Virus record (IMG/VR): IMGVR_UViG_3300032288_004964 | Span: 321,334 to 385,333 of that record | Length of the DNA: 64,000 bases | Strand: one strand, 5' to 3' | Shown: piece by piece, positions 11,580-48,886 of the stretch | How the letters are laid out: each line of letters begins with the position of its first letter | Position numbering within the stretch: position 1 is the stretch's first letter | Made by a program: the position numbers and the translations under genes | The notes under the pieces: generated by a model | The model's database searches: none | Told to the model about the DNA's origin: nothing | The model's input: the letters and a program-made list of their open reading frames with translations, nothing else

Positions 11580-13469
11580 ATGGCAAAAGATGTAATTATT
11601 GGAATTGACTTAGGAACTACTAACTCATGTGTGGCAGTAGTTGAAGGTGGTGAACCAATTGTAATCACCAACTCAGAAGGTAAAAGAACAACTCCATCAG
11701 TTGTTGGGTTTACTGAAAATGACAGAAAGATTGGAGACCCTGCTAAGCGTCAGGCGGTAACTAATCCAACAAAAACTGTTTATTCTATCAAAAGATTTAT
11801 CGGGAAAGATTTCTCAAACTGTACTGATGAGGTAACAAGAGTACCTTATCAAGTTGTTAAATCTGGTAGTAATGTACCAGGTGTTAAGATTGATGATAGA
11901 ACTTATACACCTCAAGAAATTTCAGCTATGATTCTTCAAAAGATGAAGAAAACTGCTGAAGATTATTTAGGTTATGAAGTAAAAAGAGCTGTTATTACAG
12001 TTCCTGCTTACTTCGGTGACGCTGAAAGAACTGCAACTATTGAAGCTGGTGAAATCGCTGGTTTGAAAGTTGAGCGTATTATCAATGAACCAACTGCTGC
12101 GGCGTTAGCTTATGGTTTAGATAAGAAAAGTTCAGATTCTAAGATTTTAGTATTTGACTGTGGTGGTGGTACACATGACGTATCAGTTCTTGAAATCGGT
12201 GATGGAGTTTTTGAAGTTAAATCTACTGATGGTGATACTCACTTAGGTGGTGATGACTTTGATAATGAAATCATTAACTGGATGGTAGAAGAATTCAAAT
12301 CAGAACATGGTATGGATTTATCTAAAGATCCAATGGGTCTACAGCGTCTTAAGGATGCTGCAGAAAAGGCTAAGATTGAACTTTCATCAACTTCTCAGAG
12401 TGAAATCAATCTTCCTTATATCACAGCTAAAGATGGAATGCCTTTACACTTTGTTAAAACCCTAACAAAAGCTAAATTTGAACAAATGACCTCTAAACTT
12501 GTTGATAGAGCTATCGCTTGTGCTAAATCTGCTTTGAAGAGTGCTAAGTTAAAACCATCTGATATTGATGAAGTTATTCTTGTTGGTGGTTCTACAAGAA
12601 TTCCGGCGATTCAAGAAGCTGTTGAAAAATACATTGGTAAGAAACCAAACAAATCAGTTAACCCGGATGAAGTTGTTGCCTTAGGTGCGGCTATTCAAGG
12701 AGCTGTTTTAACTGGTGGTATTACTGATGTTCTCCTTTTAGATGTTACTCCTCTTTCATTAGGTATTGAAACTATGGGTGGTGTAATGACAAGATTGATT
12801 GAGTCTAATACAACTATTCCGACCCGTAAGTCAGAAACATTCTCAACTGCATCAGACAATCAACCATCTGTAGAAATTCATGTTCTACAAGGTGAAAGAC
12901 CGATGGCTAGAGATAACCGTTCTCTTGGTAGATTCCATTTAGATGGTATCATGCCAGCTCCAAGAGGAGTACCTCAAGTAGAAGTAACTTTAGATATTGA
13001 TGCTAATGGTATCTTATCTGTATCTGCTAAAGATAAAGCTACTGGTAAAGAAAACAAAATCCGTATTGAAGGAGGTTCTCAATTATCTAAAGAAGAAATT
13101 GAGAAAATGAAAATGGAAGCTGAAGCTAATGCTGAATCTGACCGTCTTGAAAAAGAAAAGGTGGATAAAGTTAATATGGCTGATAACTTAATCTTCCAAA
13201 CTGAAAAACAAATCAAAGAATTCTCTGATAAGTTAACAGAAGAAGATAAATCAAAGCTTAATGCTGATTTAGAAGAAGTTAGAAAAGCTCACTCTGATAA
13301 AGATGTTGAGAAGATTGATGAATCAACTAAGAAGTTAAATGAGACTTGGTCTCAAATTTCTACAAGATTGTATCAACAATCACAAGAAGCTCCACAAGAA
13401 CCACAATCTAATAGCACCGACACTGGTAATGGCGATGTTGAAGATGTAAACTTTGAAGAAGTTAAGTAA
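11580..13469 (+). CDS. dnaK: DnaK (Hsp70)
   Basis: [63 protein letters not shown]. Confidence 0.98.
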
Positions 13470-30323: not shown

Positions 30324-31028
30324 TTACAATTTAGAAATAACAGGATCATTATTATCAACACCTTTAATTGGAATTGGTGGATTTACATCAAAATTCTTAT
30401 TAATAAAAGTCTTTAACTTATTTTCTATAAAGTGGTCAGGAACCTCACCATCTGGATTCATTAATTCCATTTCTAAACTAAGTTCTGTTGAAAATCTATC
30501 TAAAACTTCTGGCTTAATAGCCTCAACTAATCTATCAGAAACAACAAAAGCTCTTGTAAATCTATCTTTAAGTGGAACTTCTCCTTCTGGTAATTTCATA
30601 TAAATATCTATCATCTTCTTCAAAAAGTCTGTATATTTTGAATGCGGGTTTATATAATTAAATATTGGATCAAATACTCTACGAAACATTCTAGATGTAC
30701 CAAATACAATTCCAACAATTGCTACTATTGGAAAGAATGGAACAAGAGCTAATGGTATAGCAGATGGTAGAATATTAAATATACCTTTTTTTATGTCTGT
30801 TTTTCTTTTAGCATCAATAGCATCTTTAAAGATAGCATTTAACATACCAAATGTAAACTTTTCACCTTTTTCATTTAAGTAATGGCCAAGATGACCATTT
30901 TTTGCTAAGTGAACTTGTTTGTTTAATTCATCTTCATCACTAACTCCCATTTCAATTAACTTAGCTCTGATATTTCTATCATATCTTTCTAAAATTAAAA
31001 AATGGTTATATCTCTTTAATGTGCGCAT
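30324..31028 (-). CDS. putative virion protein with N-terminal tag and hydrophobic segment (start revised from 31037)
   Basis: MRTLKRYNHFLILE; ALVPFFPIVAIVGIVFG. Confidence 0.65.
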   Translation of the reverse strand: MRTLKRYNHFLILERYDRNIRAKLIEMGVSDEDELNKQVHLAKNGHLGHYLNEKGEKFTFGMLNAIFKDAIDAKRKTDIKKGIFNILPSAIPLALVPFFPIVAIVGIVFGTSRMFRRVFDPIFNYINPHSKYTDFLKKMIDIYMKLPEGEVPLKDRFTRAFVVSDRLVEAIKPEVLDRFSTELSLEMELMNPDGEVPDHFIENKLKTFINKNFDVNPPIPIKGVDNNDPVISKL

Positions 31029-31064
31029 AAAAAACAAAATAAACTTTTTATTATATATAAAACT

Positions 31065-32408
31065 ATGGTAACAGAAAAAAGTATTACAGAATTCTTATCC
31101 AATGAGTACAAAGAATTTGCGATGTATTCAATTGAAGGCCGTGCTATTCCTTCGGTTATTGATGGTTTTAAACCAACTCAAAGAAAAATTATACACGGAT
31201 CATCTCAGATTTGGAAAACAGGAAATGAAAAAACCTTAAAGATATTTCAACTATCTGGATATATTGCAGCAAATTGTTTTTATCATCACGGTGATGCGTC
31301 ATTATCAAATGCCATTATTAATATGGCCCAGAGATTTAAGAACAATGCCCCTCTTTTAGAAGAAGAAGGTCAGTTTGGTTCTTTAAGATCACCACAAGCT
31401 GGTGCTCCTCGTTACATAGGTACTAAATTATCTGATAACTTTAGACTAATCTATAAAGACTTTGACCTATTAGATTATAAAGAAGAAGAAGGTGAGTCAA
31501 TTGAACCTAAATACTTTTTACCTATTGTTCCAGCTGTTTTATTAAATGGTTCATCAGGTATTGCTGTAGGATTTGCCTCTAATGTTTTAAATAGAGATAT
31601 TAAGTCTATTATAGATGCTTGTATTAAAGTTTTAGCTGGTAAAAATCCAGGTGAAGTTAAACCATCTTTAAATGAGTTTACTGGAGAATTTATACAAGAT
31701 AAAGAAAATAACAAAAGATGGATTATTAGAGGTAGATTTGAAAGAGCTAATACAACAACTGTTAAAATTAGTGAACTTCCTCCTTCAATGACTTATGAGA
31801 AGTATGAGGAAATATTAGATAAGTTAGCGGATGATAAACTAATTGTCTCTTATGATGATAATTGCAAAGATAATATTGATTATGTTATTAAATTCACCAG
31901 AGCAGATTTAGAGAAATTAGATGATGAAAAATTAGTTAAGTTATTGAAACTTGAAGAATCATCAACTGAGATTTTCTCAACACTAGATGAGAATGGTAAA
32001 TTAAAAATATTTGAAAATACATCTGATATTATTAAATACTTTGTTGATTTTAGATTAACTTATTACCATAAAAGAAAACAATTCCTCTTAGACAAAATGA
32101 ATCGTGACCTTAAAATATTAGGTAACAGAGGTAGATTTATTAAAGCGATTCTTGATGGTAAGTTAAAAGTAAATAATGTTCCAAAGGTTCAAATTATTGA
32201 AGGAATTGAAGCAATGAGTTTAGATAAGATAGATGATTCTTATGACTATCTTTTAAGAATGCCTATCTACTCTTTAACAAAAGAAGTATTTGATAAATTA
32301 AAAGAAGATTTTTCAGCTAAGAAAGAAGAAATAAAAGCTTTAGAAGCAACTGATCCTAAAGATATGTATGTTCAGGATTTAACTGAATTAAAAAAGAAAT
32401 TTAAATGA
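31065..32408 (+). CDS. type II topoisomerase medium subunit (T4 gp52-like)
   Basis: RAIPSVIDGFKPTQRK, YHHGDASL, AGAPRY (catalytic Tyr), NGSSGIAVGF. Confidence 0.95.
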   Translation: MVTEKSITEFLSNEYKEFAMYSIEGRAIPSVIDGFKPTQRKIIHGSSQIWKTGNEKTLKIFQLSGYIAANCFYHHGDASLSNAIINMAQRFKNNAPLLEEEGQFGSLRSPQAGAPRYIGTKLSDNFRLIYKDFDLLDYKEEEGESIEPKYFLPIVPAVLLNGSSGIAVGFASNVLNRDIKSIIDACIKVLAGKNPGEVKPSLNEFTGEFIQDKENNKRWIIRGRFERANTTTVKISELPPSMTYEKYEEILDKLADDKLIVSYDDNCKDNIDYVIKFTRADLEKLDDEKLVKLLKLEESSTEIFSTLDENGKLKIFENTSDIIKYFVDFRLTYYHKRKQFLLDKMNRDLKILGNRGRFIKAILDGKLKVNNVPKVQIIEGIEAMSLDKIDDSYDYLLRMPIYSLTKEVFDKLKEDFSAKKEEIKALEATDPKDMYVQDLTELKKKFK

Positions 32409-32554
32409 GACCACATAGAACTTGGTTTAAAATAATATTTAATCCTATTTTAAGAAAGTTTGGATGGTCTATTGTTAGTGTATTTGATGGTGATGAATTA
32501 AAAGGATATCAATTAAGAAGATACCCAGAAAACTGCGAAGTGTTAAAAAAATAG
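32405..32554 (+). CDS. 49-aa hypothetical protein (not in ORF track)
   Basis: MRPHRTWFKIIFNPILRKFGWSIVSVFDGDELKGYQLRRYPENCEVLKK; start overlaps the gp52 stop; TAG TAA double stop. Confidence 0.6.
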   Translation: MRPHRTWFKIIFNPILRKFGWSIVSVFDGDELKGYQLRRYPENCEVLKK

Positions 32555-32565
32555 TAAACTAACTT

Positions 32566-32931
32566 ATGAATCAAAGATCAATTAATCTTTCACCTTGGAA
32601 AGAAATATCTATTACTAGAAGAATGCAACATCATACTATGATTGATGTTGCTACAATCATTATTGGTTATAATGATTATTACTTTTATATCCAAGATGAT
32701 ATTGAGAAGATAATTGATGTTAGTTGTATGCCTAACTATATTAAAGAAGATTGGGTTAATTATAATAAAAAAGAATTAACAATTAATATAGTAGAAGACC
32801 ATATAAAAAAGTATGTTGATTTAAGAGATTCTGAAATTTATTTAGAAGTACCTAATCAAACTTATGATGATATTATAAATGAGCTACAATCAATTAAAAG
32901 AGATTTAATAATTAAAAAGATTATTATTTAA
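32566..32931 (+). CDS. hypothetical protein with C-terminal tail motif
   Basis: ends IKRDLIIKKIII. Confidence 0.75.
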   Translation: MNQRSINLSPWKEISITRRMQHHTMIDVATIIIGYNDYYFYIQDDIEKIIDVSCMPNYIKEDWVNYNKKELTINIVEDHIKKYVDLRDSEIYLEVPNQTYDDIINELQSIKRDLIIKKIII

Positions 32932-32941
32932 TTTATTTCCT

Positions 32942-32949
32942 TATATTTG
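32942..32949 (+). promoter_or_regulatory. Bacteroidota -7 element
   Basis: TATATTTG-taat-ATG(32954). Confidence 0.8.
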
Positions 32950-32953
32950 TAAT

Positions 32954-33124
32954 ATGGAAAATTTACAAAGAGAAAGAGTGAGTCTTAATGAGTTTGCTCC
33001 GCTTAATACAAAAGACTGCCAAAACATGTGTGAAAGAGATGTACTTATGACTAAACAGGGTCCAGTTATTATATGTCACGCCTGTAAAAGAATTGTAATG
33101 GATAATAGAAATCAAATTAAATAA
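32954..33124 (+). CDS. 56-aa Zn-ribbon-like protein (not in ORF track)
   Basis: CQNMC...CHAC; ATG after a 4-nt gap from the promoter. Confidence 0.65.
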   Translation: MENLQRERVSLNEFAPLNTKDCQNMCERDVLMTKQGPVIICHACKRIVMDNRNQIK

Positions 33125-33128
33125 TAAT

Positions 33129-33728
33129 ATGTTCCAATCATCAAAAACCGTTAAACAACTATTTTATATCAACTTTATAGTTTTCATTATTGGAATTCTA
33201 TTACAATTAGTTGGTTTTCCATTCTATAAGGTATTTGCCTTGTATCCACCCGGCAGTCCAAACTTTGAAATATATCAGTTTATAACTTATATGTTTTTAC
33301 ACTCTGGTATATTACACATAGTTTTTAATATGTTAGCACTGGCTTCTTTTGGTCATATAACTGAGGATTATTTTGGTAGAAACAAATTCATTTTATTTTA
33401 TTTAACAACTGGTATAGGTGCAACCTTATTACATCTTTTAATGACTAATAGTCAATTACCAATGGTTGGTGCGTCTGGTGCTATTTATGGTATATTAGTA
33501 GTATCAGCTTTAATAAGTCCAAATGAGAAAGTAAGTATATTTCCAATTCCTATTGGAATTAAGTTAAAGTATTTAATATCTTCTTTATTTGTGATGGAAA
33601 TACTTTTAGGGTTTCTATCAACAGGTGATGGTGTTGGGCACTTTGCACATGTAGGCGGTGGATTAACAGGTATTTTATTTTATTTAATTAGCAGAAAATT
33701 TTCACCAAAAAAGAAAAGATGGTCATGA
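33129..33728 (+). CDS. rhomboid intramembrane serine protease
   Basis: FLHSGILHIVFNM, VGASGAIYG (Ser), HFAHVGG (His). Confidence 0.93.
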   Translation: MFQSSKTVKQLFYINFIVFIIGILLQLVGFPFYKVFALYPPGSPNFEIYQFITYMFLHSGILHIVFNMLALASFGHITEDYFGRNKFILFYLTTGIGATLLHLLMTNSQLPMVGASGAIYGILVVSALISPNEKVSIFPIPIGIKLKYLISSLFVMEILLGFLSTGDGVGHFAHVGGGLTGILFYLISRKFSPKKKRWS

Positions 33729-34303
33729 AAAAATTATTAATATTAGATATGGATGAAACTCTATTACACACAGAGACTTCCAGAGAGATTGATTACTTAC
33801 CTGAAGGATCATATGATTTTAAGTTTCCTTTAGGAGGAGGTGGTTGGTCAAATGATGAACATTGGTACTTCACACTTAAAAGACCTTTTTTAGATGAATT
33901 TATGAAATATGCCTTTGATAACTTTAAGGTTGCTATCTGGACAGCAGGTGGATCCGATTATGCTTCAGAAGCTATTTCAAGAGCTGGAATTGATAAAAGT
34001 AAATTAGAATTCTTTTGGACTCGTGAAAGATGTACTATGAAATATGATTTTGAAACAGGATTTAGTTATGGTGTTAAGAATTTAGAAAAAGTTCATAAAT
34101 CACTTGGATGGGATTTGAATAATGTCTTAATTGTTGATGATGTTCAAAAAACAGCAATTAATAATTATGGTAACTTAATTCATATTAAAGAGTTCTACAA
34201 TGATAGAAATGATATTGAGTTAAAAAAACTAATGAACTATTTAGATAGAATTAAAGATTCTCCTAATTTTAGGAGTATTGAAAAAAGAGGTTGGTCTAAT
34301 TAA
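33719..34303 (+). CDS. HAD-family (FCP1/NIF-like) phosphatase
   Basis: LILDMDETLLH, KRPFLDEF, IWTAG, LIVDD. Confidence 0.88.
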   Translation: MVMKKLLILDMDETLLHTETSREIDYLPEGSYDFKFPLGGGGWSNDEHWYFTLKRPFLDEFMKYAFDNFKVAIWTAGGSDYASEAISRAGIDKSKLEFFWTRERCTMKYDFETGFSYGVKNLEKVHKSLGWDLNNVLIVDDVQKTAINNYGNLIHIKEFYNDRNDIELKKLMNYLDRIKDSPNFRSIEKRGWSN

Positions 34304-34334
34304 AAATATATCTAAAATTTTTAGATATATTTTT
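34302..34334. terminator. AT-rich palindrome / terminator
   Basis: aaaaatatatctaaaa-t-ttttagatatattttt. Confidence 0.55.
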
Positions 34335-34418
34335 TTTACATTTTTGATTATTATATATACTATGTAATCTCAATCCAGAGTATATAGGGTTAGAGACAAA
34401 AAAATCATAATTAAAATT

Positions 34419-36107
34419 ATGAAAAATTTATGTCTTTTATTATTATTTATAATTATTTCACCTAAAATTGGTAAATCTCAAATGTGTAATACCACTCCAA
34501 CAAATATGGGTGGTTTAACACTAACGGGCACTTGGCAAAATGCCGCTGCCGCTTCCGGTGCTAAAAGATACTGGACATTTAATGCGACTGCTGGATGTAC
34601 CTATGACTTTAGTTCTTGTAATAGTATAAATACAAATGATACTTATTTAAGATTATACTCTGGTACAAATCCACTGACTGCTGTTTTACAAACTTCTAAT
34701 GATGATAATGGTCCTTGGTGTACTGGTACAAAAGCTTCTATTTCTTGGGTTTGTCCAACAACTGGTGCTTATTCTATATTATTGACAAATTATTCTTGTG
34801 CTAACATATCTTCAAACTCTATTTTAAGTTATAGACAAATATGCGCACCTCCTTATAATCCATGTTTAACAATACCATCAATTAATTGTGGTGTTTTAAC
34901 TAATTTATCTGTATCATCTGGTAATGGTATATACAATCCGCCATCAACTACTTGTGGTTTCTCAACACCTGGTAAAGAATATATCTACTCATTTACACCA
35001 ACTGTAACTGGTAACTATCAAATATCACAACCTACAAGTTTTGGATATATTGATTACTTTTATAAGTTAGCATCTGGTGGTTGTAATGGTACTGGTTGGA
35101 CTTGTATAGATGATATCTCAAATGCCAATGTTGGTAATGCTAATGTAAATATTGCTTTAACATCTGGTGTTACATATTATATCTTATTAGATCCAGAATC
35201 TACCGCTGGTGGATCAGTTTCTTTTAGTATAACTTGTCCAGCTCCTGTAATACCCCCTGCTAATAATGACTGTTCTGGTGCTATATCTATAGCATCCTTA
35301 CCTTATAGTAGTGGTATTGTTTCAAATAATAATGCAACAGATGATGTGCCAACTTCAACATCTGGTTGTAGTACACAAGGATCAAATGTTTGGTATACTG
35401 TAGTTGGTAATGGTAATAACTTAACAGATACAACTTGTAACGCTTCTACTAATTTTGATACTGAGGTAAGAGTTTATACTGGAAATTGTTCGTCATTAAA
35501 TAGTATGGTTGAAGTTACTTGTAATGATGATTATTCATCTTGTGCTAGTAGTGGTCTGCAATCAAGTGTTAGTTGGTGTTCTCAAGTAGGTATAACTTAT
35601 TATATTTCGGTTGGGTATTTTGCGTCTGGTGTTGGTTATGGTAATTATGTTTTGAGTGTAACAGATGGTGTTTCTTGCTCACCATTACCAATAGAATTAA
35701 TTAGTTTTACTGGAAATTTAACAGAAGATAATAGTGTTTTATTAAAATGGACAACTGAAACAGAAAGAAATAATAATTACTTTCTTGTTGAAAAATCATT
35801 AGATGCTGTTAATTGGTCTAATGTATCAAGAGTACAAGCTGCTGGAAATTCACTGTATAGAATAGATTATTCAACTATTGATAATAGTCCTACTATTGGA
35901 GTTAATTATTATAAATTAACACAAGTTGATTATGATGGTCAAAGAGAATCTTTTAATATCATAGCGGTAGAGCTAGTAATAGATATGGAAAAATGTTCAG
36001 ATACATTTTATGATTTAATGGGTAGAGTAATAGATATTACAATTGCATCACCTGGTGTTTATTTACAAAAGTGTAATGGTGGGTATAAAAAGATAATTAA
36101 AAGATAA
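34419..36107 (+). CDS. secreted Cys/Ser/Thr-rich Bacteroidota-type surface protein with reduced T9SS type-A-like CTD
   Basis: signal peptide; PANNDCSGA; PLPIELISF...KWTTETERNNNYF...YYKLTQVDYDG; YDLMGR...GVY...KKIIK. Confidence 0.8.
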   Translation: MKNLCLLLLFIIISPKIGKSQMCNTTPTNMGGLTLTGTWQNAAAASGAKRYWTFNATAGCTYDFSSCNSINTNDTYLRLYSGTNPLTAVLQTSNDDNGPWCTGTKASISWVCPTTGAYSILLTNYSCANISSNSILSYRQICAPPYNPCLTIPSINCGVLTNLSVSSGNGIYNPPSTTCGFSTPGKEYIYSFTPTVTGNYQISQPTSFGYIDYFYKLASGGCNGTGWTCIDDISNANVGNANVNIALTSGVTYYILLDPESTAGGSVSFSITCPAPVIPPANNDCSGAISIASLPYSSGIVSNNNATDDVPTSTSGCSTQGSNVWYTVVGNGNNLTDTTCNASTNFDTEVRVYTGNCSSLNSMVEVTCNDDYSSCASSGLQSSVSWCSQVGITYYISVGYFASGVGYGNYVLSVTDGVSCSPLPIELISFTGNLTEDNSVLLKWTTETERNNNYFLVEKSLDAVNWSNVSRVQAAGNSLYRIDYSTIDNSPTIGVNYYKLTQVDYDGQRESFNIIAVELVIDMEKCSDTFYDLMGRVIDITIASPGVYLQKCNGGYKKIIKR

Positions 36108-36234
36108 TAATTAAAACAAAAATAAATATTAAAAATATACAAATTATATTATATTAATTTTTCTAGATTTAAGATATTATGAGGTATCGAATTTCAATCT
36201 ATATGATATAATTATATTAAATTAAACCCAAATT

Positions 36235-38931
36235 ATGAAAAAATTGCTTTTAATAGCAACATTCTTGATTACAAGCCTGTTGTCTTATTCTCAAGCACCT
36301 GCTAATGATAATTGTAGCGGTGCTCAAAGTCTCGGAACACTTCCAACACCAGCCGCCTGTCCAAGTGGTATTGGTTCATCGGTCAATGTTTCAGGTACAA
36401 ATATTAATGCGACAGGACCATTGCCATATACAACATTATTAGGATGTCAGACTGGTGGTAATCAGCCTGGTCCAGCTTTAGATGTATGGTACTCTTTTGT
36501 TGCATCAGGTAATCAAGTTAATATAAATATAACACCTGGTTCTGCTCCATTTTTAGCAAGTCCGGCTATTACACTTTGGACAGGATCTTGTGGGGCTTTA
36601 GTAGGATTTAACTGTGATAATAATGGAACTTTAACTGGTAATAATTCAGTTACATTTCAACCCATGACACCTGGTCAAACATATTACATACAAATAAGTG
36701 GTATGAATGCTACTAATCAGGGAAATTTCAACTTATCTGTGAATTCTTCTAATGATTGTAATAATTGTTTACAAGTTGCTAATCTAACAGTTAGTCCTGC
36801 TCCCACAAATGGAACTTACCCACCAAATACAACAGTTAATTTTTGCTATAATATTTCTTCTTTTACTCAAGTAAGTTCCAATTGGTTACATGGAGTAATA
36901 CCTACTTTTGGGTGTGGGTGGAATTTATCTACACTTACTACAACACCTGCCGCATCTTGTTCTGGTAGTGGAACTTGGAGTTGGTATCCATCTTGGACCA
37001 GTTCAGCAAATGGTTCTACTTGGGGACCTGGATTTGCTTATGATTATAATACATCTCCTGGCAATCCTGGTAATAACTTTGGTGATAACTGTTCAACTCC
37101 TAATTGGAACTTTTGTTGGTCTATTAAAACAAAAGCTGTTTGTAGTCCAACTTGTACAAACTTAAATATTAATATCAATACAACCGGTGATGGTGAGTCT
37201 GGATCTTGGACATCAGTAGCTTGTCTAGGTGATCCAAACTATCAATTTGCAGCAGTTATGTCTTGTTGTAGTTCAACTGCATCCAGTACAAATCCAACTT
37301 GTTTTGGTGGTTCTAATGGTTCAGCAACTGCTATTCCTGGTTCAACCGGTGTTCCTCCATTTACATATTCTTGGAATACAGTTCCCACACAGACTACACA
37401 AACTGCTACTAATTTAAGTGCTGGGGCATATACCTGCACAGTTACTGATTTTAATGGATGTACTTCTACTTGTAATGTTACTATTTCAAATCCTCCTCAA
37501 ATTTTAGTACCAGTAACACAATCAAATGTAACTTGTTTCGGCGGTTCTAATGGATCAGCAACTGCTAACCCATCTGGTGGAGTTGGTCCTTATACTTATT
37601 CTTGGAATACAGTTCCTACACAAACTACACAAACTGCTACTAATCTAATACCTGGTACATATACTGTAACTGTGGCAAGCTCAAATGGTTGTATAAAAAC
37701 AAACACAGTTAGTATTACTCAACCAACGGCAATAGTTGTAACTACTTCAACTACCAGTGCTTCTTGTGGTAATTCAAATGGTTCAGCAACTGCTAACCCA
37801 TCTGGTGTTGGTCCTTATACCTATTCTTGGAACACAACACCAGTTCAAACTACACAAACGGCAACAAATATACCATTTGGTAGTTATACTGTTACTGTTA
37901 CAAATAGTAGTGGATGTACTGGGACAACAACTGCTAATGTACCATCAACTGGTAGTGTAAGTGCTACTTCAACATCAACACCAACAAGTTGTTTTGGTAG
38001 TTCAGATGGTTCTGCCACTGCTAATGGATTTGGAGGTACTTTATATACATATCTTTGGAATACAACACCACCTCAAACAAGTCAAACAATTACTGGATTA
38101 CCAGCGGGCGTTTATACTTGTACTATATCAAGTGCTGCTTGTAATGCAACAACAACTATTATAGTTACCGAACCACCTATTATAAATGTAACATACTCAA
38201 CTACTCCATTATCTGGGTGTGTACCATTAGCAGTAACATATAATAATACAACTCCAGGTATATCAAATTGTAGTTGGAATATAAATGGTGTGATTACTAA
38301 TAGTTGTAATGTTACTCAAGTATTTACATCAGGTGGAACATATAACTCAACACTAACTGTAACTGATGCTAATGGTTGTTCAAATTCAACAGGTCCAATA
38401 GTTGCTAATGCTTACCCTATTCCATTTGCTTCTTTTTCTCCAAATCCATCAGTAACTAATTTATTATCACCAACTATTACATTTGATAATATGAGTTCGG
38501 GTGGTAGTTATTTTTGGAATTTTGGTGATGGTAACACATCAAGTAGTCTAAATCCTACAAACACATATGCTGATACAGGAACATATGTGATTAATCTAAC
38601 AGTAACTAGTCAATATGGTTGTTCTGATTCAACCTATTCTACAATACATATAACTGATATTCTCTCTGTTTATATACCTAATGCTTTTACACCTAATGGT
38701 GATGGTAAGAATGATTCATTTTTACCAATTATTTTAGGATTTGATAAATATGAATATTGGATATTTGACCGTTGGGGTGAAATGATATTCAATACAAATT
38801 CTGGTAGATCTTGGGATGGAACTTATAAAGGTAAATTAGTTCAACAAGATGTTTATATTTGTAAGTTAGTAGTTTATGATTTAAATAAGAAAAAGTATGA
38901 ATATACTAATCACATTTCTTTAATTAGATAA
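36235..38931 (+). CDS. secreted SprB-repeat / PKD protein with T9SS type-B (gliding-motility-associated) CTD
   Basis: signal peptide; four SprB-like repeats (TCFGGSNGSATA...YTYSWNT...VTD.NGC); YFWNFGDG PKD; YIPNAFTPNGDGKND...IFDRWG...WDGTYKG. Confidence 0.9.
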   Translation: MKKLLLIATFLITSLLSYSQAPANDNCSGAQSLGTLPTPAACPSGIGSSVNVSGTNINATGPLPYTTLLGCQTGGNQPGPALDVWYSFVASGNQVNINITPGSAPFLASPAITLWTGSCGALVGFNCDNNGTLTGNNSVTFQPMTPGQTYYIQISGMNATNQGNFNLSVNSSNDCNNCLQVANLTVSPAPTNGTYPPNTTVNFCYNISSFTQVSSNWLHGVIPTFGCGWNLSTLTTTPAASCSGSGTWSWYPSWTSSANGSTWGPGFAYDYNTSPGNPGNNFGDNCSTPNWNFCWSIKTKAVCSPTCTNLNININTTGDGESGSWTSVACLGDPNYQFAAVMSCCSSTASSTNPTCFGGSNGSATAIPGSTGVPPFTYSWNTVPTQTTQTATNLSAGAYTCTVTDFNGCTSTCNVTISNPPQILVPVTQSNVTCFGGSNGSATANPSGGVGPYTYSWNTVPTQTTQTATNLIPGTYTVTVASSNGCIKTNTVSITQPTAIVVTTSTTSASCGNSNGSATANPSGVGPYTYSWNTTPVQTTQTATNIPFGSYTVTVTNSSGCTGTTTANVPSTGSVSATSTSTPTSCFGSSDGSATANGFGGTLYTYLWNTTPPQTSQTITGLPAGVYTCTISSAACNATTTIIVTEPPIINVTYSTTPLSGCVPLAVTYNNTTPGISNCSWNINGVITNSCNVTQVFTSGGTYNSTLTVTDANGCSNSTGPIVANAYPIPFASFSPNPSVTNLLSPTITFDNMSSGGSYFWNFGDGNTSSSLNPTNTYADTGTYVINLTVTSQYGCSDSTYSTIHITDILSVYIPNAFTPNGDGKNDSFLPIILGFDKYEYWIFDRWGEMIFNTNSGRSWDGTYKGKLVQQDVYICKLVVYDLNKKKYEYTNHISLIR
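37262..38185 (+). repeat. four ~78-aa SprB-like intragenic repeats
   Basis: recurrent ggttcagcaactgcta and tattcttggaa(t/c)aca blocks; boundaries approximate. Confidence 0.75.
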
Positions 38932-38938
38932 TTTTTCT

Positions 38939-38946
38939 TATATTTG
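38939..38946 (+). promoter_or_regulatory. Bacteroidota -7 element
   Basis: TATATTTG-taaa-ATG(38951). Confidence 0.8.
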
Positions 38947-38950
38947 TAAA

Positions 38951-39319
38951 ATGAGAAAAGAGAGTATTATTGAAATGATTGATAAAAGAATTGTAGATTC
39001 TTATGTTCAAGGTATTGCAACATCTTCTATTATAGAAGATATGAGTACTCGTATTAGAAATATGTCTACCGTTGTTAAAATGGAAGGACTTGATTTATCA
39101 ACTCTTCTTCAAAAAGAATTTGAAGAATTAGATAATGAGGATATTAAAGTAAGAGCAAAATATAGTGTATTTTATATTAAACACTCTACTCAAAGAATTA
39201 AAGATTTAAATTGGTTGGATTCTAAAAAGAAATCTTTTTTTGGATACTCAAATTCACAAATATTTAAGTTAATAAAACTAAAGGAAAAACTTTTAGTGAA
39301 ACATAGTATGCCGTTTTAA
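38951..39319 (+). CDS. hypothetical protein
   Basis: 122-aa ORF behind a promoter. Confidence 0.7.
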   Translation: MRKESIIEMIDKRIVDSYVQGIATSSIIEDMSTRIRNMSTVVKMEGLDLSTLLQKEFEELDNEDIKVRAKYSVFYIKHSTQRIKDLNWLDSKKKSFFGYSNSQIFKLIKLKEKLLVKHSMPF

Positions 39320-39352
39320 TAAACAAAGTTTCATTTTTTTCATAAAATAAAA

Positions 39353-39919
39353 ATGAAATTCTATTTAAACAAACCTATTATTTCCGAACAGGAAAAACTA
39401 TCTTGGGAAAAAGGTGATTTACCTAAAATGACATTATCTCAATATGAAATAATGGAAGGTAGTCTTGATGATATTGAACAACATATTATCAACTTTATAA
39501 AAAAATCATTTTCTGATATAAAGGAAGCTTTAGAAATAAATGAGTTTGAAGAAGCTTCTATAATAATGCCAGCTTTACAAATGTGTTCAGTTGATGAAAT
39601 AGATGTTATTGATATGAATATAGAAATAACAAATACAGAAGAAGATAGCTTACAATGGGCTCTAAAGAATTTATCAAATGGTTTAACTGATGAATTAGAA
39701 GAAGTTGAAGAAGATGAAGAAGTTGAAGAAGATATAGATGATGTGGGTGAAGTTATAATAGATGATACTGAGCAAGAAGAAACAGAAGAATCAGTAGAAG
39801 AAGATGCTGTTGAGCATATCTATGAAGAAACTGAGAACCCAACAGATGATGAGATATCTGAAATGGAAATGGATATAATCAGAAAGAGTCTTTTAGGAGA
39901 TGAAGATAAAACCATGTAA
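39353..39919 (+). CDS. very acidic hypothetical protein
   Basis: E/D-rich C-half (EEVEEDEEVEEDIDD). Confidence 0.75.
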   Translation: MKFYLNKPIISEQEKLSWEKGDLPKMTLSQYEIMEGSLDDIEQHIINFIKKSFSDIKEALEINEFEEASIIMPALQMCSVDEIDVIDMNIEITNTEEDSLQWALKNLSNGLTDELEEVEEDEEVEEDIDDVGEVIIDDTEQEETEESVEEDAVEHIYEETENPTDDEISEMEMDIIRKSLLGDEDKTM

Positions 39920-39972
39920 CATCATGATGATATTTCTATAATAAATACTGACGAAAATTGACATCGGATTTT

Positions 39973-40701
39973 TTATAGTCTGATCCATTCTCTGAATCTA
40001 ATTACAGATTCATGTAATGTTTCAACAAAATTAAACTCTTTAAGGAAAGTTGAGTATTCATCTTTATATCCTTTTTTAGTTTCATCAAACTTATCTTTAG
40101 TAAATTGCCAATTAAATGATAATTGATTTGGTGTTTTAAATCCAAAGAAACCTAATACTTCTTTTTCAAGTTTTACAGCTTCTTCACCATTCCAATTGTG
40201 ACCTACCGCAACTATACCACACTCTTTATCTTTTAATAAATTAGATTCACCTAAAGTAGCATGTCTATTTTCTAACCAAGTTAACCTTTCAATTAACTGA
40301 GTATAGATAGCATTCATCTTACCCCAACGGATTGAGCCGAAAAAGATAACTATATCAGCATCATAAATAGCATTTGCTACTTTGTGCATTTCATCTGATT
40401 TATTATTAACAGAAGCCCAACATCTAATAAACTTATTAGGATTATTACTCTTTAAAATAGAATCTTTGATACCACAAGTATTTCCTTTATGTGTTGATAC
40501 ATTACCCTCACAAGGAAATATTTTAAGCTTACTGACATTTATTATATCAACATTATCTAATCTCTTTTTAAGTTCATCTGCTATAATAGATGATTTAGGA
40601 AGTTCTTTTTCACCTTCCCATCTATTAGATGTGGTTAGAAAAACAATCTTTTTACCTTCTTGTTTCTTTAAATAATTATATAATCTTTTAAGCTTATCCA
40701 T
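39973..40701 (-). CDS. flavodoxin-fold NADPH-dependent FMN reductase / iron-sulfur flavoprotein-like
   Basis: FLTTSNR, IFPCEG, DADIVIFFGSIRWG, IERL, GIVAVG; TTATATATAC 4 nt before ATG. Confidence 0.75.
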   Translation of the reverse strand: MDKLKRLYNYLKKQEGKKIVFLTTSNRWEGEKELPKSSIIADELKKRLDNVDIINVSKLKIFPCEGNVSTHKGNTCGIKDSILKSNNPNKFIRCWASVNNKSDEMHKVANAIYDADIVIFFGSIRWGKMNAIYTQLIERLTWLENRHATLGESNLLKDKECGIVAVGHNWNGEEAVKLEKEVLGFFGFKTPNQLSFNWQFTKDKFDETKKGYKDEYSTFLKEFNFVETLHESVIRFREWIRL

Positions 40702-48798: not shown

Positions 48799-48870
48799 GC
48801 AGGTATAGCTCAGTGGTAGAGCAGGATTCTCTAAAAGTCTTTGTCGTGGGTTCGATCCCCGCTACCCGCA
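48799..48870 (+). tRNA. tRNA with anticodon CUA (amber suppressor); CCA not encoded
   Basis: GCAGGTA-TA-GCTC AGTGGTA GAGC-A-GGATT CT[CTA]AA AGTCT-TTGTC-GTGGG TTCGATC CCCGC-TACCCGC-A; full cloverleaf with one A-C mismatch at 3:70. Confidence 0.88.
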
Positions 48871-48886
48871 CTAAAATAAAACAAAC

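What the first reader, a model, noticed from the sequence alone, without database searches (positions are those of the whole stretch)
36235..38931. Phage-encoded SprB-repeat adhesin-like protein with a T9SS type-B CTD
Seen: signal peptide, four SprB-like repeats, a PKD domain and an intact PNAFTPNGDG CTD. Established: type-B CTD proteins such as SprB are exported by T9SS onto the gliding track, and gliding/T9SS surface components are implicated in phage susceptibility in Flavobacterium. Inference: the phage remodels the infected cell surface (superinfection exclusion, motility or aggregation change). This is unusual cargo for a phage.
Basis: partly seen in the sequence, partly recalled or inferred. 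Interest (0 to 1): 0.75.

Follow-up and report, generated by a model that had tools for sequence, protein, structure and literature searches.

The report
Huge-phage gene for a T9SS-exported adhesin
A 385-kb tailed phage of Bacteroidota carries an intact, conserved gene for a surface-adhesin-like protein with the signals for export by the host's type IX secretion system, so the phage probably places its own sticky protein on the infected cell; this has been reported for other phages, but not for this type of signal or for this phage group.

Summary
ORF 36235..38931 (+) encodes 898 aa with six parts:
- a Sec-type signal peptide;
- a two-beta-sandwich head (aa 21-345);
- 4 SprB repeats;
- 2 PKD stretches;
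- a complete type-B T9SS C-terminal domain (CTD), above the curated cut-offs of PF13585 and TIGR04131.

The gene is truly phage DNA and not a misassembly.
- The record has a major head protein, portal, terminase and tail sheath.
- A contig from another study spans both gene junctions.
- A curated 642-kb phage genome has the orthologue in the same place.
- Codon use matches the phage, and dN/dS is about 0.16.

Orthologues occur in at least 17 related huge-phage contigs, with 4 to 14 SprB repeats. They sit inside a family of chromosomal Bacteroidota surface proteins; the nearest verified cellular copy is in Crocinitomicaceae.

The phage has no PorP/SprF shuttle gene, so the protein is an "orphan" cargo that must use a host shuttle.

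Best reading: the protein is exported by Sec and T9SS and held on the infected cell's surface as an adhesin. Export itself, the ligand and the benefit to the phage (adhesion or exclusion of other phages) are untested.

It is not an SprB orthologue. Phage-borne T9SS cargo has been published, with type-A signals in one case, and IMG/VR holds about 320 viral type-B CTD stretches. This is therefore a new variant of a known kind.

The parts
36235..38931 (+). Whole gene: 898-aa secreted adhesin-like protein, T9SS type-B cargo
   Evidence: ORF list; Pfam and NCBIfam domains; dN/dS 0.157 against the 88%-identical orthologue in L103
36235..36294 (+). Sec-type signal peptide, aa 1-20; predicted cleavage leaves Gln-20 or Ala-21 at the new N-terminus
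   Evidence: Read from the sequence. Conserved as MKKxLLxxxFLLxSLxxxAQ in 26 relatives. Modelled as a helix at aa 2-18. No lipobox Cys.
36295..36750 (+). Head domain 1 (aa 21-172): beta-sandwich of the PPC / collagen-binding-domain type
   Evidence: AF2 model, pLDDT 83.6. Foldseek match to the ColG collagen-binding domain 1nqd, probability 1.0, TM by target about 0.6. ESM Atlas neighbours carry PPC and GBD_T9SS_assoc domains. Shares 32% identity with a domain of the neighbouring 562-aa protein.
36763..37269 (+). Head domain 2 (aa 177-345): cysteine-rich beta-sandwich with no named family; the most constrained part of the protein
   Evidence: AF2 model. AFDB hit A0A7Y5QUL2, 44% identity, rmsd 2.2 A. 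dN/dS 0.063. Many invariant Cys.
37270..38154 (+). Stalk: four SprB repeats (aa 346-640, period about 77 aa). Repeat cores lie at 37276-37386, 37516-37617, 37741-37836 and 37966-38064.
   Evidence: Pfam PF13573, 4 stretches; six-frame hits in the own genome; repeat spacing
38155..38673 (+). Two PKD-type Ig-like domains (aa 641-813)
   Evidence: Pfam PKD_4, 2 stretches, E 9.4e-18; PKD, E 5.4e-7
38674..38928 (+). Type-B T9SS C-terminal sorting domain (aa 814-898)
   Evidence: PF13585 and TIGR04131 above their curated cut-offs. All conserved blocks present. dN/dS 0.21. Predicted docking on a PorP/SprF barrel: ipSAE 0.54, best control 0.07, weak support.
34419..36107 (+). Neighbouring gene: 562-aa secreted protein with a PPC-like domain related to head domain 1, an Fn3-like domain and a shortened type-A-like CTD remnant
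   Evidence: Signal-peptide-like N-terminus. BLASTP E 1e-7 to the head. Homologues P0126, P0130 and P0132 carry a full PF18962 where the phage copy has about 35 aa. Found next to the orthologue in L103 as well.
38951..39319 (+). Conserved downstream 122-aa ORF of unknown function, with no signal peptide
   Evidence: An ORF of similar size (118-122 aa) follows the orthologue in L103, L008 and LR756502; homology to the window's ORF was shown by tblastn for L008, L020 and L021, and by alignment for L103 (91% identity). No Pfam or PHROG match.
33129..34303 (+). Context: rhomboid protease gene (33129-33728) and NIF-type phosphatase gene (33719-34303), upstream on the same strand
   Evidence: Pfam Rhomboid E 6e-31 and NIF E 2.5e-34. 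The same pair lies upstream of the orthologue in LR756502. Rhomboid also lies upstream in L008.

Best explanation
This is a real gene of a huge tailed phage of Bacteroidota. It belongs to a family that such phages exchange with their hosts' chromosomes.

Proposed mechanism:
1. The protein is made in the infected cell.
2. Sec carries it across the inner membrane, using the signal peptide.
3. The host type IX secretion system carries it across the outer membrane, using the type-B CTD.
4. A host PorP/SprF-type outer-membrane shuttle picks it up and holds it on the cell surface. The phage has no shuttle gene of its own.
5. On the surface, a stalk of 4 SprB repeats and 2 PKD domains projects a disulfide-rich head made of two beta-sandwiches, which binds a still unknown ligand.

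The selected function is most likely ligand binding by the head. The infected cell would gain a phage-specified adhesin that changes what it sticks to, such as particles or other host cells.

A side effect, or an alternative benefit, is competition with host type-B adhesins for shuttles. Those adhesins are thought to be phage receptors in Flavobacterium.

Shown here: gene identity, phage origin, conservation, purifying selection and intact signals. Inferred: export, anchoring and adhesin function. Speculative: the benefit to the phage.
For: Domain calls:
- SprB x4, PKD x2, CHU_C and TIGR04131 are all above their cut-offs.
- All CTD blocks are intact.

Phage origin:
- G000 encodes a major head protein, prohead protease, portal, large terminase and tail sheath.
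- It also has T4-type topoisomerase II genes and an RNA ligase.
- Its nearest DNA relatives are the 634-kb and 642-kb uncultured phages LR745206 and LR756502. PMC7162821 describes its four largest complete, curated, circular genomes as 634, 636, 642 and 735 kb and predicts Bacteroidetes hosts for all genomes above 634 kb; these two records are assumed to be among them from their lengths.

Not chimeric:
- One 7,556-nt contig from a different study covers window 34000-39722 with 5 differences and even depth.
- L103 repeats the same three-gene cassette.
- LR756502 has topoisomerase II, rhomboid, NIF, then a 1670-aa orthologue with 14 SprB repeats, PKD and CHU_C.

Adapted to the phage and functional:
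- Gene GC is 0.354, against 0.358 expected from its amino-acid make-up and the phage's codon preferences.
- GC3 is 0.124 and the codon-fit rank is 0.47.
- dN/dS is 0.157 overall, 0.063 in head domain 2 and 0.21 in the CTD.

Extracytoplasmic signature:
- There are 14 invariant or nearly invariant cysteines in the head.
- Cysteine is 3.8% of the protein against 1.2% genome-wide.

Adhesin-like anatomy:
- The head folds as two beta-sandwiches. Domain 1 resembles the ColG collagen-binding (PPC) module.
- No enzyme domain was found.
- Stalk length varies by whole repeats, 4 to 14, among orthologues.

Cellular relatives:
- 235 Bacteroidota relatives share the signal peptide and head; the complete ones checked are long SprB-repeat proteins ending like type-B CTDs.
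- The nearest verified chromosomal copy, L027 in Crocinitomicaceae, lies beside LpxC-FabZ and CinA genes.

Shuttle use:
- Type-B cargo is anchored by PorP-like proteins (PMC9143113).
- Orphan type-B cargoes can share a non-adjacent shuttle (PMC12618676).
- The phage CTD is predicted to dock on the PorP/SprF protein encoded next to a bacterial homologue: ipSAE 0.54, best control 0.07, graded weak support. That mark was reached by 51 of 78 solved complexes and 2 of 108 mismatched pairs. All contacts lie in aa 815-897.
Against: - There is no experimental or transcript evidence. No RNA run holds the gene.
- The host is unknown, so the presence of a T9SS and a matching shuttle is only inferred.
- The phage encodes no PorP/SprF protein. 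Type-B CTD and shuttle pairing can be specific (PMC12618676).
- The complex prediction is graded weak, and its shuttle came from a bacterium not shown to be the host.
- In some related phages the orthologue lies about 2.6 kb from the tail-sheath gene.
- One SprB repeat matches a PHROG annotated 'virion structural protein'.
- The ligand and the benefit to the phage are not constrained by any result here.
Confidence: 0.6

Rival explanations
1. Superinfection exclusion is the main selected function. By loading the host T9SS and the PorP/SprF shuttles with phage cargo, or by covering the surface, the protein displaces or masks host SprB/RemA-type adhesins that other phages use as receptors.
For: - SprB and RemA are thought to act as phage receptors, and T9SS or gliding mutants are phage-resistant in Flavobacterium (PMC9804748).
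- The phage cargo must borrow a host shuttle, because none is phage-encoded.
- The phage carries a second type-B cargo gene of 1547 aa.
Against: - The head, not the CTD, is the most constrained part: dN/dS 0.06 against 0.21.
- Head-only forms without a CTD are common in viruses. This points to ligand binding by the head rather than shuttle blocking.
- To my knowledge, known exclusion proteins are small membrane proteins or lipoproteins.
Confidence: 0.2
2. It is a virion protein, such as a fibre, whisker or Ig-like decoration. The signal peptide and CTD would be inherited baggage with no function in the phage.
For: - PKD and Ig-like domains are common on virions (own knowledge; Fraser et al. 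2006, cited in PMC6949934).
- In L007, L012, L013 and L015 the orthologue lies near the tail-sheath gene.
- One repeat matches phrog_26672, 'virion structural protein', at E 7e-8.
Against: - The signal peptide is conserved in all orthologues.
- The CTD is under purifying selection, dN/dS 0.21, with every conserved block intact.
- The many conserved cysteines fit an oxidising compartment.
- In the window, L008, L011, L020, L021 and LR756502 the gene lies in a non-structural region next to topoisomerase II.
- Sec export would separate the protein from virion assembly in the cytoplasm.
Confidence: 0.08
3. It is exported by T9SS but released, either soluble or on vesicles, rather than anchored. 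It would then act at a distance, for example by coating particles, neighbouring cells or other phages.
For: - No cognate shuttle or anchor is encoded by the phage.
- CTDs are proposed to carry separate secretion and targeting signals (PMC12618676 abstract), so a cargo could in principle be secreted without being anchored.
Against: - Type-B cargoes studied so far (SprB, PG1035) stay bound to PorP-like proteins on the surface (PMC9143113).
- A stalk of variable length makes most sense for an anchored protein.
- The docking prediction favours binding to a shuttle.
Confidence: 0.1
4. It is a host-derived misassembly, or a recent non-functional passenger gene.
For: - Local GC is higher than in the rest of the window (0.354 against about 0.28).
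- The closest cellular homologues are bacterial surface proteins.
Against: - The GC excess is fully explained by amino-acid composition.
- GC3 and codon fit are phage-like.
- Independent contigs span both junctions.
- Synteny holds in a curated complete phage genome.
- Orthologues occur in at least 17 phage contigs.
- dN/dS is 0.16-0.29.
Confidence: 0.02

Closest known systems
[quoted passage not shown]
   Same: - Sec signal peptide plus a C-terminal type-B sorting domain with all conserved blocks.
- Repetitive Ig-like body and a putative adhesin role.
- No adjacent PorP/SprF gene. The F. johnsoniae orphans also lack one and share the non-adjacent shuttle Fjoh_1677 (PMC12618676).
   Different: - It is encoded by a phage, so the shuttle must come from another genome, the host's.
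- It has a distinct conserved two-domain head.
- Secretion has not been tested.
SprB, the mobile gliding adhesin of Flavobacterium johnsoniae
   Same: Both have SprB repeats (PF13573) and a type-B CTD.
   Different: - SprB is 669 kDa and co-expressed with its shuttle SprF. Its C-terminal 368 aa link it to the motility machinery (PMC9143113).
- The phage protein is 898 aa with only 4 repeats, has PKD domains before the CTD, and has no sprF.
- It is not an orthologue, and there is no evidence that it rides the gliding track.
Phage-encoded T9SS cargo in 'Cryophage' (Bellas et al. 2020, PMC7468147) and T9SS sorting-domain ORFs in gut crAss-BACON phage clusters (de Jonge et al. 2019, PMC6949934)
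   Same: Phages of Bacteroidota that carry genes whose products bear T9SS sorting domains and are presumed to hijack the host secretion system.
   Different: - The Cryophage cargoes have type-A CTDs and are enzymes or a PA14 protein. They are hypervariable between phage variants.
- Here the CTD is type B, which uses a different shuttle and anchoring route.
- Here the body is an adhesin-like stalk and head.
- Here the gene is conserved and syntenic across a clade of huge phages.
Chromosomal homologues in Bacteroidota MAGs, for example the 1880-aa protein of a Crocinitomicaceae MAG (L027)
   Same: They share the signal peptide and head (44-58% identity); the complete copies checked are long SprB-repeat proteins ending like type-B CTDs.
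   Different: - Complete bacterial copies are mostly longer, about 1,000 to more than 3,000 aa.
- The phage copies fall in one well-supported group of 25 sequences that also holds 9 MAG-labelled sequences. Some of these are verified bacterial copies interleaved with the phage copies, which implies repeated exchange.
PblA/PblB of Streptococcus mitis phage SM1 (own knowledge; not checked here)
   Same: The concept is the same: a phage-encoded protein ends up on the bacterial surface and acts as an adhesin.
   Different: - PblA and PblB are tail-fibre-like virion proteins released by lysis, which re-bind the Gram-positive wall.
- The protein here has dedicated Sec and T9SS export signals.
- There is no sequence relationship.

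Membership tests
T9SS type-B CTD cargo (TIGR04131 / PF13585) | A domain at the extreme C-terminus that matches the type-B sorting-domain models above their curated cut-offs | tested here: met
   PF13585 41.5 bits (cut-off 27), aa 814-891. TIGR04131 48.6 bits (cut-off 35), aa 814-898, model positions 3-85 of 85.
T9SS type-B CTD cargo (TIGR04131 / PF13585) | The conserved sequence blocks of the last 100 aa are intact. Paillat et al. 2025 showed that five motifs, A to E, are each needed for secretion. | tested here: met
   Aligned with 14 other type-B CTDs, every invariant or nearly invariant column is kept: P, F, P, N-D, RWG, W, Y, G. Mapping these blocks onto the published motifs A-E is my inference, because the figure is not held.
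T9SS type-B CTD cargo (TIGR04131 / PF13585) | An N-terminal Sec signal peptide | tested here: met
   MKK, then a 13-residue hydrophobic core, then SYS|Q. Conserved in 26 relatives and modelled as a helix at aa 2-18. This was judged by eye and by conservation, because no SignalP-type tool was available.
T9SS type-B CTD cargo (TIGR04131 / PF13585) | A cognate PorP/SprF-like shuttle, usually encoded next to the cargo gene | tested here: not met
   PF11751 has no match anywhere in the 385-kb phage genome, even at E <= 1. This is not disqualifying: 3 of the 12 F. johnsoniae cargoes are orphans, and only 1 of 9 bacterial homologue loci tested has an adjacent PorP/SprF gene. Predicted docking on a bacterial PorP/SprF protein has weak support: 0.54 against a best control of 0.07.
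T9SS type-B CTD cargo (TIGR04131 / PF13585) | It is made in a cell that has a T9SS, and its secretion depends on that system | not testable with these tools
   The host is unknown. The nearest phage relatives by DNA are the 634-kb and 642-kb records LR745206 and LR756502; PMC7162821 predicts Bacteroidetes hosts for all of its genomes above 634 kb. Nearly all cellular homologues are from Bacteroidota.
SprB gliding adhesin (orthologue of F. johnsoniae SprB) | SprB repeats (PF13573) | tested here: met
   4 stretches, E 8.8e-28
SprB gliding adhesin (orthologue of F. johnsoniae SprB) | A very large (669 kDa), highly repetitive protein co-expressed with its shuttle SprF | tested here: not met
   898 aa with 4 repeats. 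No sprF/porP-like gene in the phage. SprB features are taken from PMC9143113.
SprB gliding adhesin (orthologue of F. johnsoniae SprB) | It is propelled along the cell surface by the gliding machinery through its C-terminal 368 aa | not tested
   No SprB sequence was fetched for comparison, and movement can only be tested by experiment.
Phage virion Ig-like decoration or fibre proteins | Cytoplasmic assembly with no export signals, a gene in the structural module, and presence in virions | tested here: inconclusive
   - Export signals are present and conserved.
- The gene lies next to topoisomerase II in the window and five relatives, but near the tail sheath in four others.
- No virion proteome is available.
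Phage-encoded type-A T9SS cargo (Cryophage type) | A type-A CTD (PF18962 / TIGR04183) | tested here: not met
   The protein has no PF18962 match, and the whole phage genome has none at E <= 0.001. The control genomes did not ring either, so the genome-wide negative is weak. The neighbouring 562-aa protein has only a shortened type-A-like tail.

The most novel reading that the evidence does not exclude
A clade of the largest known phages, the relatives of the 634-kb and 642-kb uncultured phages, keeps a dedicated cassette for remodelling the surface of the infected cell. One or more phage-made adhesins would be exported through the host T9SS and anchored on host PorP/SprF shuttles. The adjacent rhomboid protease, NIF phosphatase and a second secreted protein might assist. 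Infected cells would then actively change their attachment, aggregation or gliding, or become closed to other phages. This would be a phage-directed use of the Bacteroidota type-B secretion and anchoring route.
Probability: 0.2. Interest if true: 0.8.

Novelty: new variant of a known kind. Interest (0 to 1): 0.55.

Why it matters
- The gene gives an independent sequence-based link between this group of huge phages and T9SS-bearing Bacteroidota, with Crocinitomicaceae-like Flavobacteriales as the nearest cellular source.
- It extends phage-borne T9SS cargo from type-A enzymes to type-B anchored adhesins, which use a different shuttle and anchoring route.
- Because the phage cargo is an orphan, it is a natural test of how type-B CTDs choose PorP/SprF shuttles. 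That question is open (PMC12618676).
- If export is confirmed, it would be a clear case of a lytic-type huge phage re-dressing the surface of its host during infection. This could affect particle attachment, aggregation and competition between phages in freshwater Bacteroidota.

Tried and rejected
- **Host-derived misassembly: rejected.** Evidence is.
- **A phage-encoded PorP/SprF shuttle:** none found.
- **Type-A CTDs in the phage genome:** no match. The control genomes did not ring either, so this negative is weak.
- **Whether bacterial homologues usually have an adjacent shuttle gene that the phage lost:** only L090 of 9 loci does, so nothing can be concluded. L027 has a PorP/SprF gene 1.3 kb away, but it is paired with another CHU_C gene.
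- **Promoter and terminator scan of 30900-40200:** promoter-like sites are fewer than in shuffles, and no convincing terminator flanks the gene. Uninformative.
- **Transcript evidence:** no RNA run holds the gene.
- **PHROGs:** the only hit is a single-repeat match to a 'virion structural protein' family. It was taken as a weak lead for the virion rival, not as an annotation.
- **Foldseek of the head against PDB, AFDB and BFVD:** only generic beta-sandwich binding modules came up (ColG collagen-binding domain, PPC, GBD_T9SS_assoc, GEVED). No enzyme fold and no known phage receptor-binding protein was found.
- **TAG recoding, suggested by the suppressor tRNA:** rejected for this gene. Its stop codon is TAA, the C-terminus is the canonical CTD end, and the genome is 93% coding under the standard code.
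- **Not done:** comparison with the F. johnsoniae SprB C-terminal 368 aa, a full-length structure model, and host assignment from CRISPR spacers.
Full report
**1. What is there**

ORF 36235..38931 (+) encodes 898 aa. The database matches are:
- Pfam: four SprB repeats (E 8.8e-28), two PKD_4 stretches (E 9.4e-18) and CHU_C at aa 814-891.
- NCBIfam: TIGR04131, the T9SS type B sorting domain, over aa 814-898, at 48.6 bits against a cut-off of 35.

Aligned with 14 other type-B CTDs, the phage CTD keeps every conserved block: PNAFTPNGDGxND, IFDRWG, WDG, the VY block, and the H.SLIR end.

The N-terminus (MKK, a hydrophobic core, then SYS|Q) is a Sec-type signal. It is conserved in all relatives and modelled as a helix.

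It missed aa 21-345, a conserved head that no Pfam model covers.

**2. The head**

An AlphaFold2 model built on 26 relatives (pLDDT 83.6, pTM 0.77) shows two beta-sandwiches, at aa 21-172 and aa 177-345.
- Domain 1 matches the collagen-binding (PPC-fold) module of clostridial ColG, with probability 1.0 and TM by target about 0.6.
- Domain 1 also matches 'T9SS-like galactose-binding' and PPC models.
- Domain 2 matches only unnamed N-terminal domains of Bacteroidota proteins.
- No enzyme fold appears. A search of viral structures gave only generic binding modules.

The head has 14 invariant or nearly invariant cysteines. The protein is 3.8% Cys against 1.2% genome-wide. This fits folding outside the cytoplasm.

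**3. Is it really phage DNA?**

The window is the last 64 kb of a 385,333-bp IMG/VR record, rated 95% complete by CheckV.

Phage gene content:
- The record encodes a major head protein, prohead protease, portal, large terminase and tail sheath.
- The window itself has both T4-type topoisomerase II subunits, an RNA ligase, Hsp70 and a tRNA nucleotidyltransferase.
- The nearest DNA relatives are the 634-kb and 642-kb uncultured phages LR745206 and LR756502. Al-Shayeb et al. (PMC7162821) describe curated complete genomes of 634, 636, 642 and 735 kb and predict Bacteroidetes hosts for all genomes above 634 kb. I take these two records to be among them from their lengths.

Four independent lines exclude a chimeric or host-derived insert:
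- **Independent assembly.** A single 7,556-nt contig from another study's freshwater metagenome covers window 34000-39722 with five differences and flat depth.
- **A close relative.** L103 has the same trio of genes, of 563, 897 and 122 aa.
- **Synteny in a published phage genome.** LR756502 has, in order, both topoisomerase II genes, rhomboid, NIF phosphatase, a 122-aa ORF, a 1670-aa orthologue (14 SprB repeats, PKD, CHU_C) and a 121-aa ORF. The 617-kb contig L008 is also syntenic.
- **Composition.** The local GC bump (0.354) equals the value expected from the amino-acid composition under the phage's own codon preferences (0.358). GC3 is 0.124, against a genome mean of 0.166. Codon fit is at the median.

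**4. Distribution and evolution**

Orthologues with 56-91% head identity lie on 12 IMG/VR contigs, on 4 contigs from other public metagenome assemblies, and on LR756502. All of those tested share other phage genes with this genome in their flanks. Bacterial loci share essentially none.

The gene occupies at least three positions in related phages: next to topoisomerase II, near the tail sheath, and elsewhere.

Orthologue lengths are 898, 1123, 1205, 1280, 1360, 1439, 1515 and 1670 aa. These differ by multiples of about 77 aa, which is one SprB repeat. Pfam counts 4 repeats here and 14 in LR756502.

Purifying selection holds in every part. dN/dS is 0.157 overall against L103, 0.063 in head domain 2, 0.18 in the stalk and 0.21 in the CTD.

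The same head occurs in 235 stretches of bacterial assemblies, nearly all Bacteroidota, at 44-58% identity on chromosome-size contigs. In a tree of the head:
- All phage copies fall in one group of 25 sequences (SH-aLRT 96), nested among Bacteroidota sequences.
- Bacterial copies are interleaved with the phage copies.
- L027 (Crocinitomicaceae, beside LpxC-FabZ and CinA) and L031 (beside methylmalonyl-CoA mutase) are verified chromosomal.

So the family has moved between Bacteroidota chromosomes and their huge phages more than once.

**5. How it most likely works**

Established knowledge:
- T9SS cargo has a Sec signal and a CTD.
- Type-B CTD proteins are collected and held on the surface by PorP/SprF-like outer-membrane barrels (PMC9143113).
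- In F. johnsoniae, 9 of 12 type-B cargo genes sit next to their shuttle gene, while 3 orphans share the non-adjacent shuttle Fjoh_1677.
- Five CTD motifs are needed for secretion (PMC12618676).

The phage has no PorP/SprF gene, so its protein is an orphan cargo that must use a host shuttle.

A complex prediction paired the phage C-terminus (aa 725-898) with the PorP/SprF protein encoded next to a bacterial homologue (L090, Lishizhenia).
- It gave ipSAE 0.54 against a best control of 0.07, graded weak support.
- That mark was reached by 51 of 78 solved complexes and 2 of 108 mismatched pairs.
- All confident contacts lie within aa 815-897.

I therefore infer Sec export, T9SS translocation and shuttle-mediated anchoring. 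The SprB and PKD stalk would then present the head at the surface.

The head is the most constrained part. Head-only forms also exist in viruses: an ESM Atlas cluster of 107 members is 94% viral. The selected activity is therefore most likely ligand binding, which makes this an adhesin.

Competition with host type-B adhesins could add, or could instead be, the benefit. Those adhesins are thought to be phage receptors (PMC9804748).

None of these steps was shown experimentally, and no RNA run holds the gene.

**6. Comparison with what is known**

- **Type-B cargo class.** The protein belongs here by sequence. The shuttle-adjacency criterion is not met, but that criterion is not universal.
- **SprB.** It is not an orthologue. 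It is too small, has no sprF, and has a different region before the CTD. Placement on the gliding track is unsupported.
- **Earlier reports of phage-borne T9SS cargo.**
  - Cryophage carries type-A CTD enzymes and a PA14 protein. Its authors called it 'a unique occurrence' (PMC7468147).
  - Some gut crAss-BACON phage clusters carry T9SS sorting-domain ORFs (PMC6949934).
  - Al-Shayeb et al. noted in general terms that huge phages encode surface proteins.
- **Literature search.** I found no paper in the held library that links type-B CTDs or SprB-repeat proteins to huge phages.
- **How common it is.** A scan of IMG/VR found 322 type-B CTD stretches on viral contigs, many on contigs of 100-320 kb. 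The phenomenon is recurrent but hardly described.

**7. Verdict**

The claim that this is unusual cargo is overstated. This is a new variant of a known kind, with interest 0.55.

Noticed in passing
window 48799-48871 (+): ARAGORN calls a tRNA with anticodon CTA, labelled tRNA-Pyl, which is an amber-suppressor type. The genome still looks standard-code: it is 93% coding under table 11, and TAG ends 27 of 274 long ORFs. The role of this tRNA is unexplained.
   Followed up: partly
window 33129-33728 and 33719-34303 (+): A rhomboid intramembrane protease gene and a NIF-type phosphatase gene lie just upstream on the same strand. The same pair precedes the orthologue in LR756502, and rhomboid precedes it in L008. 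A phage rhomboid next to secreted-protein genes may point to envelope manipulation.
   Followed up: partly
window 34419-36107 (+): The neighbouring 562-aa protein has a signal peptide, a PPC-like domain related to head domain 1 (32% identity, E 1e-7) and an Fn3-like domain. Its roughly 35-aa tail aligns to the ends of full type-A CTDs in homologues, but most of that domain is missing. Whether it is still T9SS cargo is unknown.
   Followed up: partly
G000:C1:216908-221551 (-), equal to L010 2909-7552: This is a second type-B T9SS cargo gene in the same phage. It encodes 1547 aa with a signal-peptide-like N-terminus, a PKD domain and CHU_C (53 bits). The rest resembles Ig-like or CHU_C-associated repeats.
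   Followed up: partly
L017, L019, L021, L022 (phage) and L031, L058, L092, L101 (bacterial): Short, CTD-less members of the head family all end in the same way...P(I/L)xH(N/D) then TAA. Each is followed within about 10-130 bases by a gene for a second signal-peptide protein, most of them with an NPDTVC...Y.W motif near the start. This looks like a conserved two-gene split form with an unknown C-terminal signal or partner.
   Followed up: partly
window 11580-13469 (+): The phage encodes a full-length Hsp70/DnaK-type chaperone (PF00012, E 1e-251; phrog_22485).
   Followed up: no
L008 639-2402 (617-kb JGI contig): The topoisomerase II large-subunit gene of this relative carries a weak precomputed Pfam hit to an intein splicing domain. 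Its topoisomerase IV-type gene is split around a 427-aa ORF.
   Followed up: no
L023, L043, L053, L070, L082, L101 (genome contigs): Contigs that carry this Bacteroidota or phage gene family are binned in MAGs labelled Dehalococcoidales, Legionellaceae, Bifidobacterium, Synechococcus and Comamonadaceae. These are almost certainly binning errors. L025 is a near-copy of phage contig L016.
   Followed up: no
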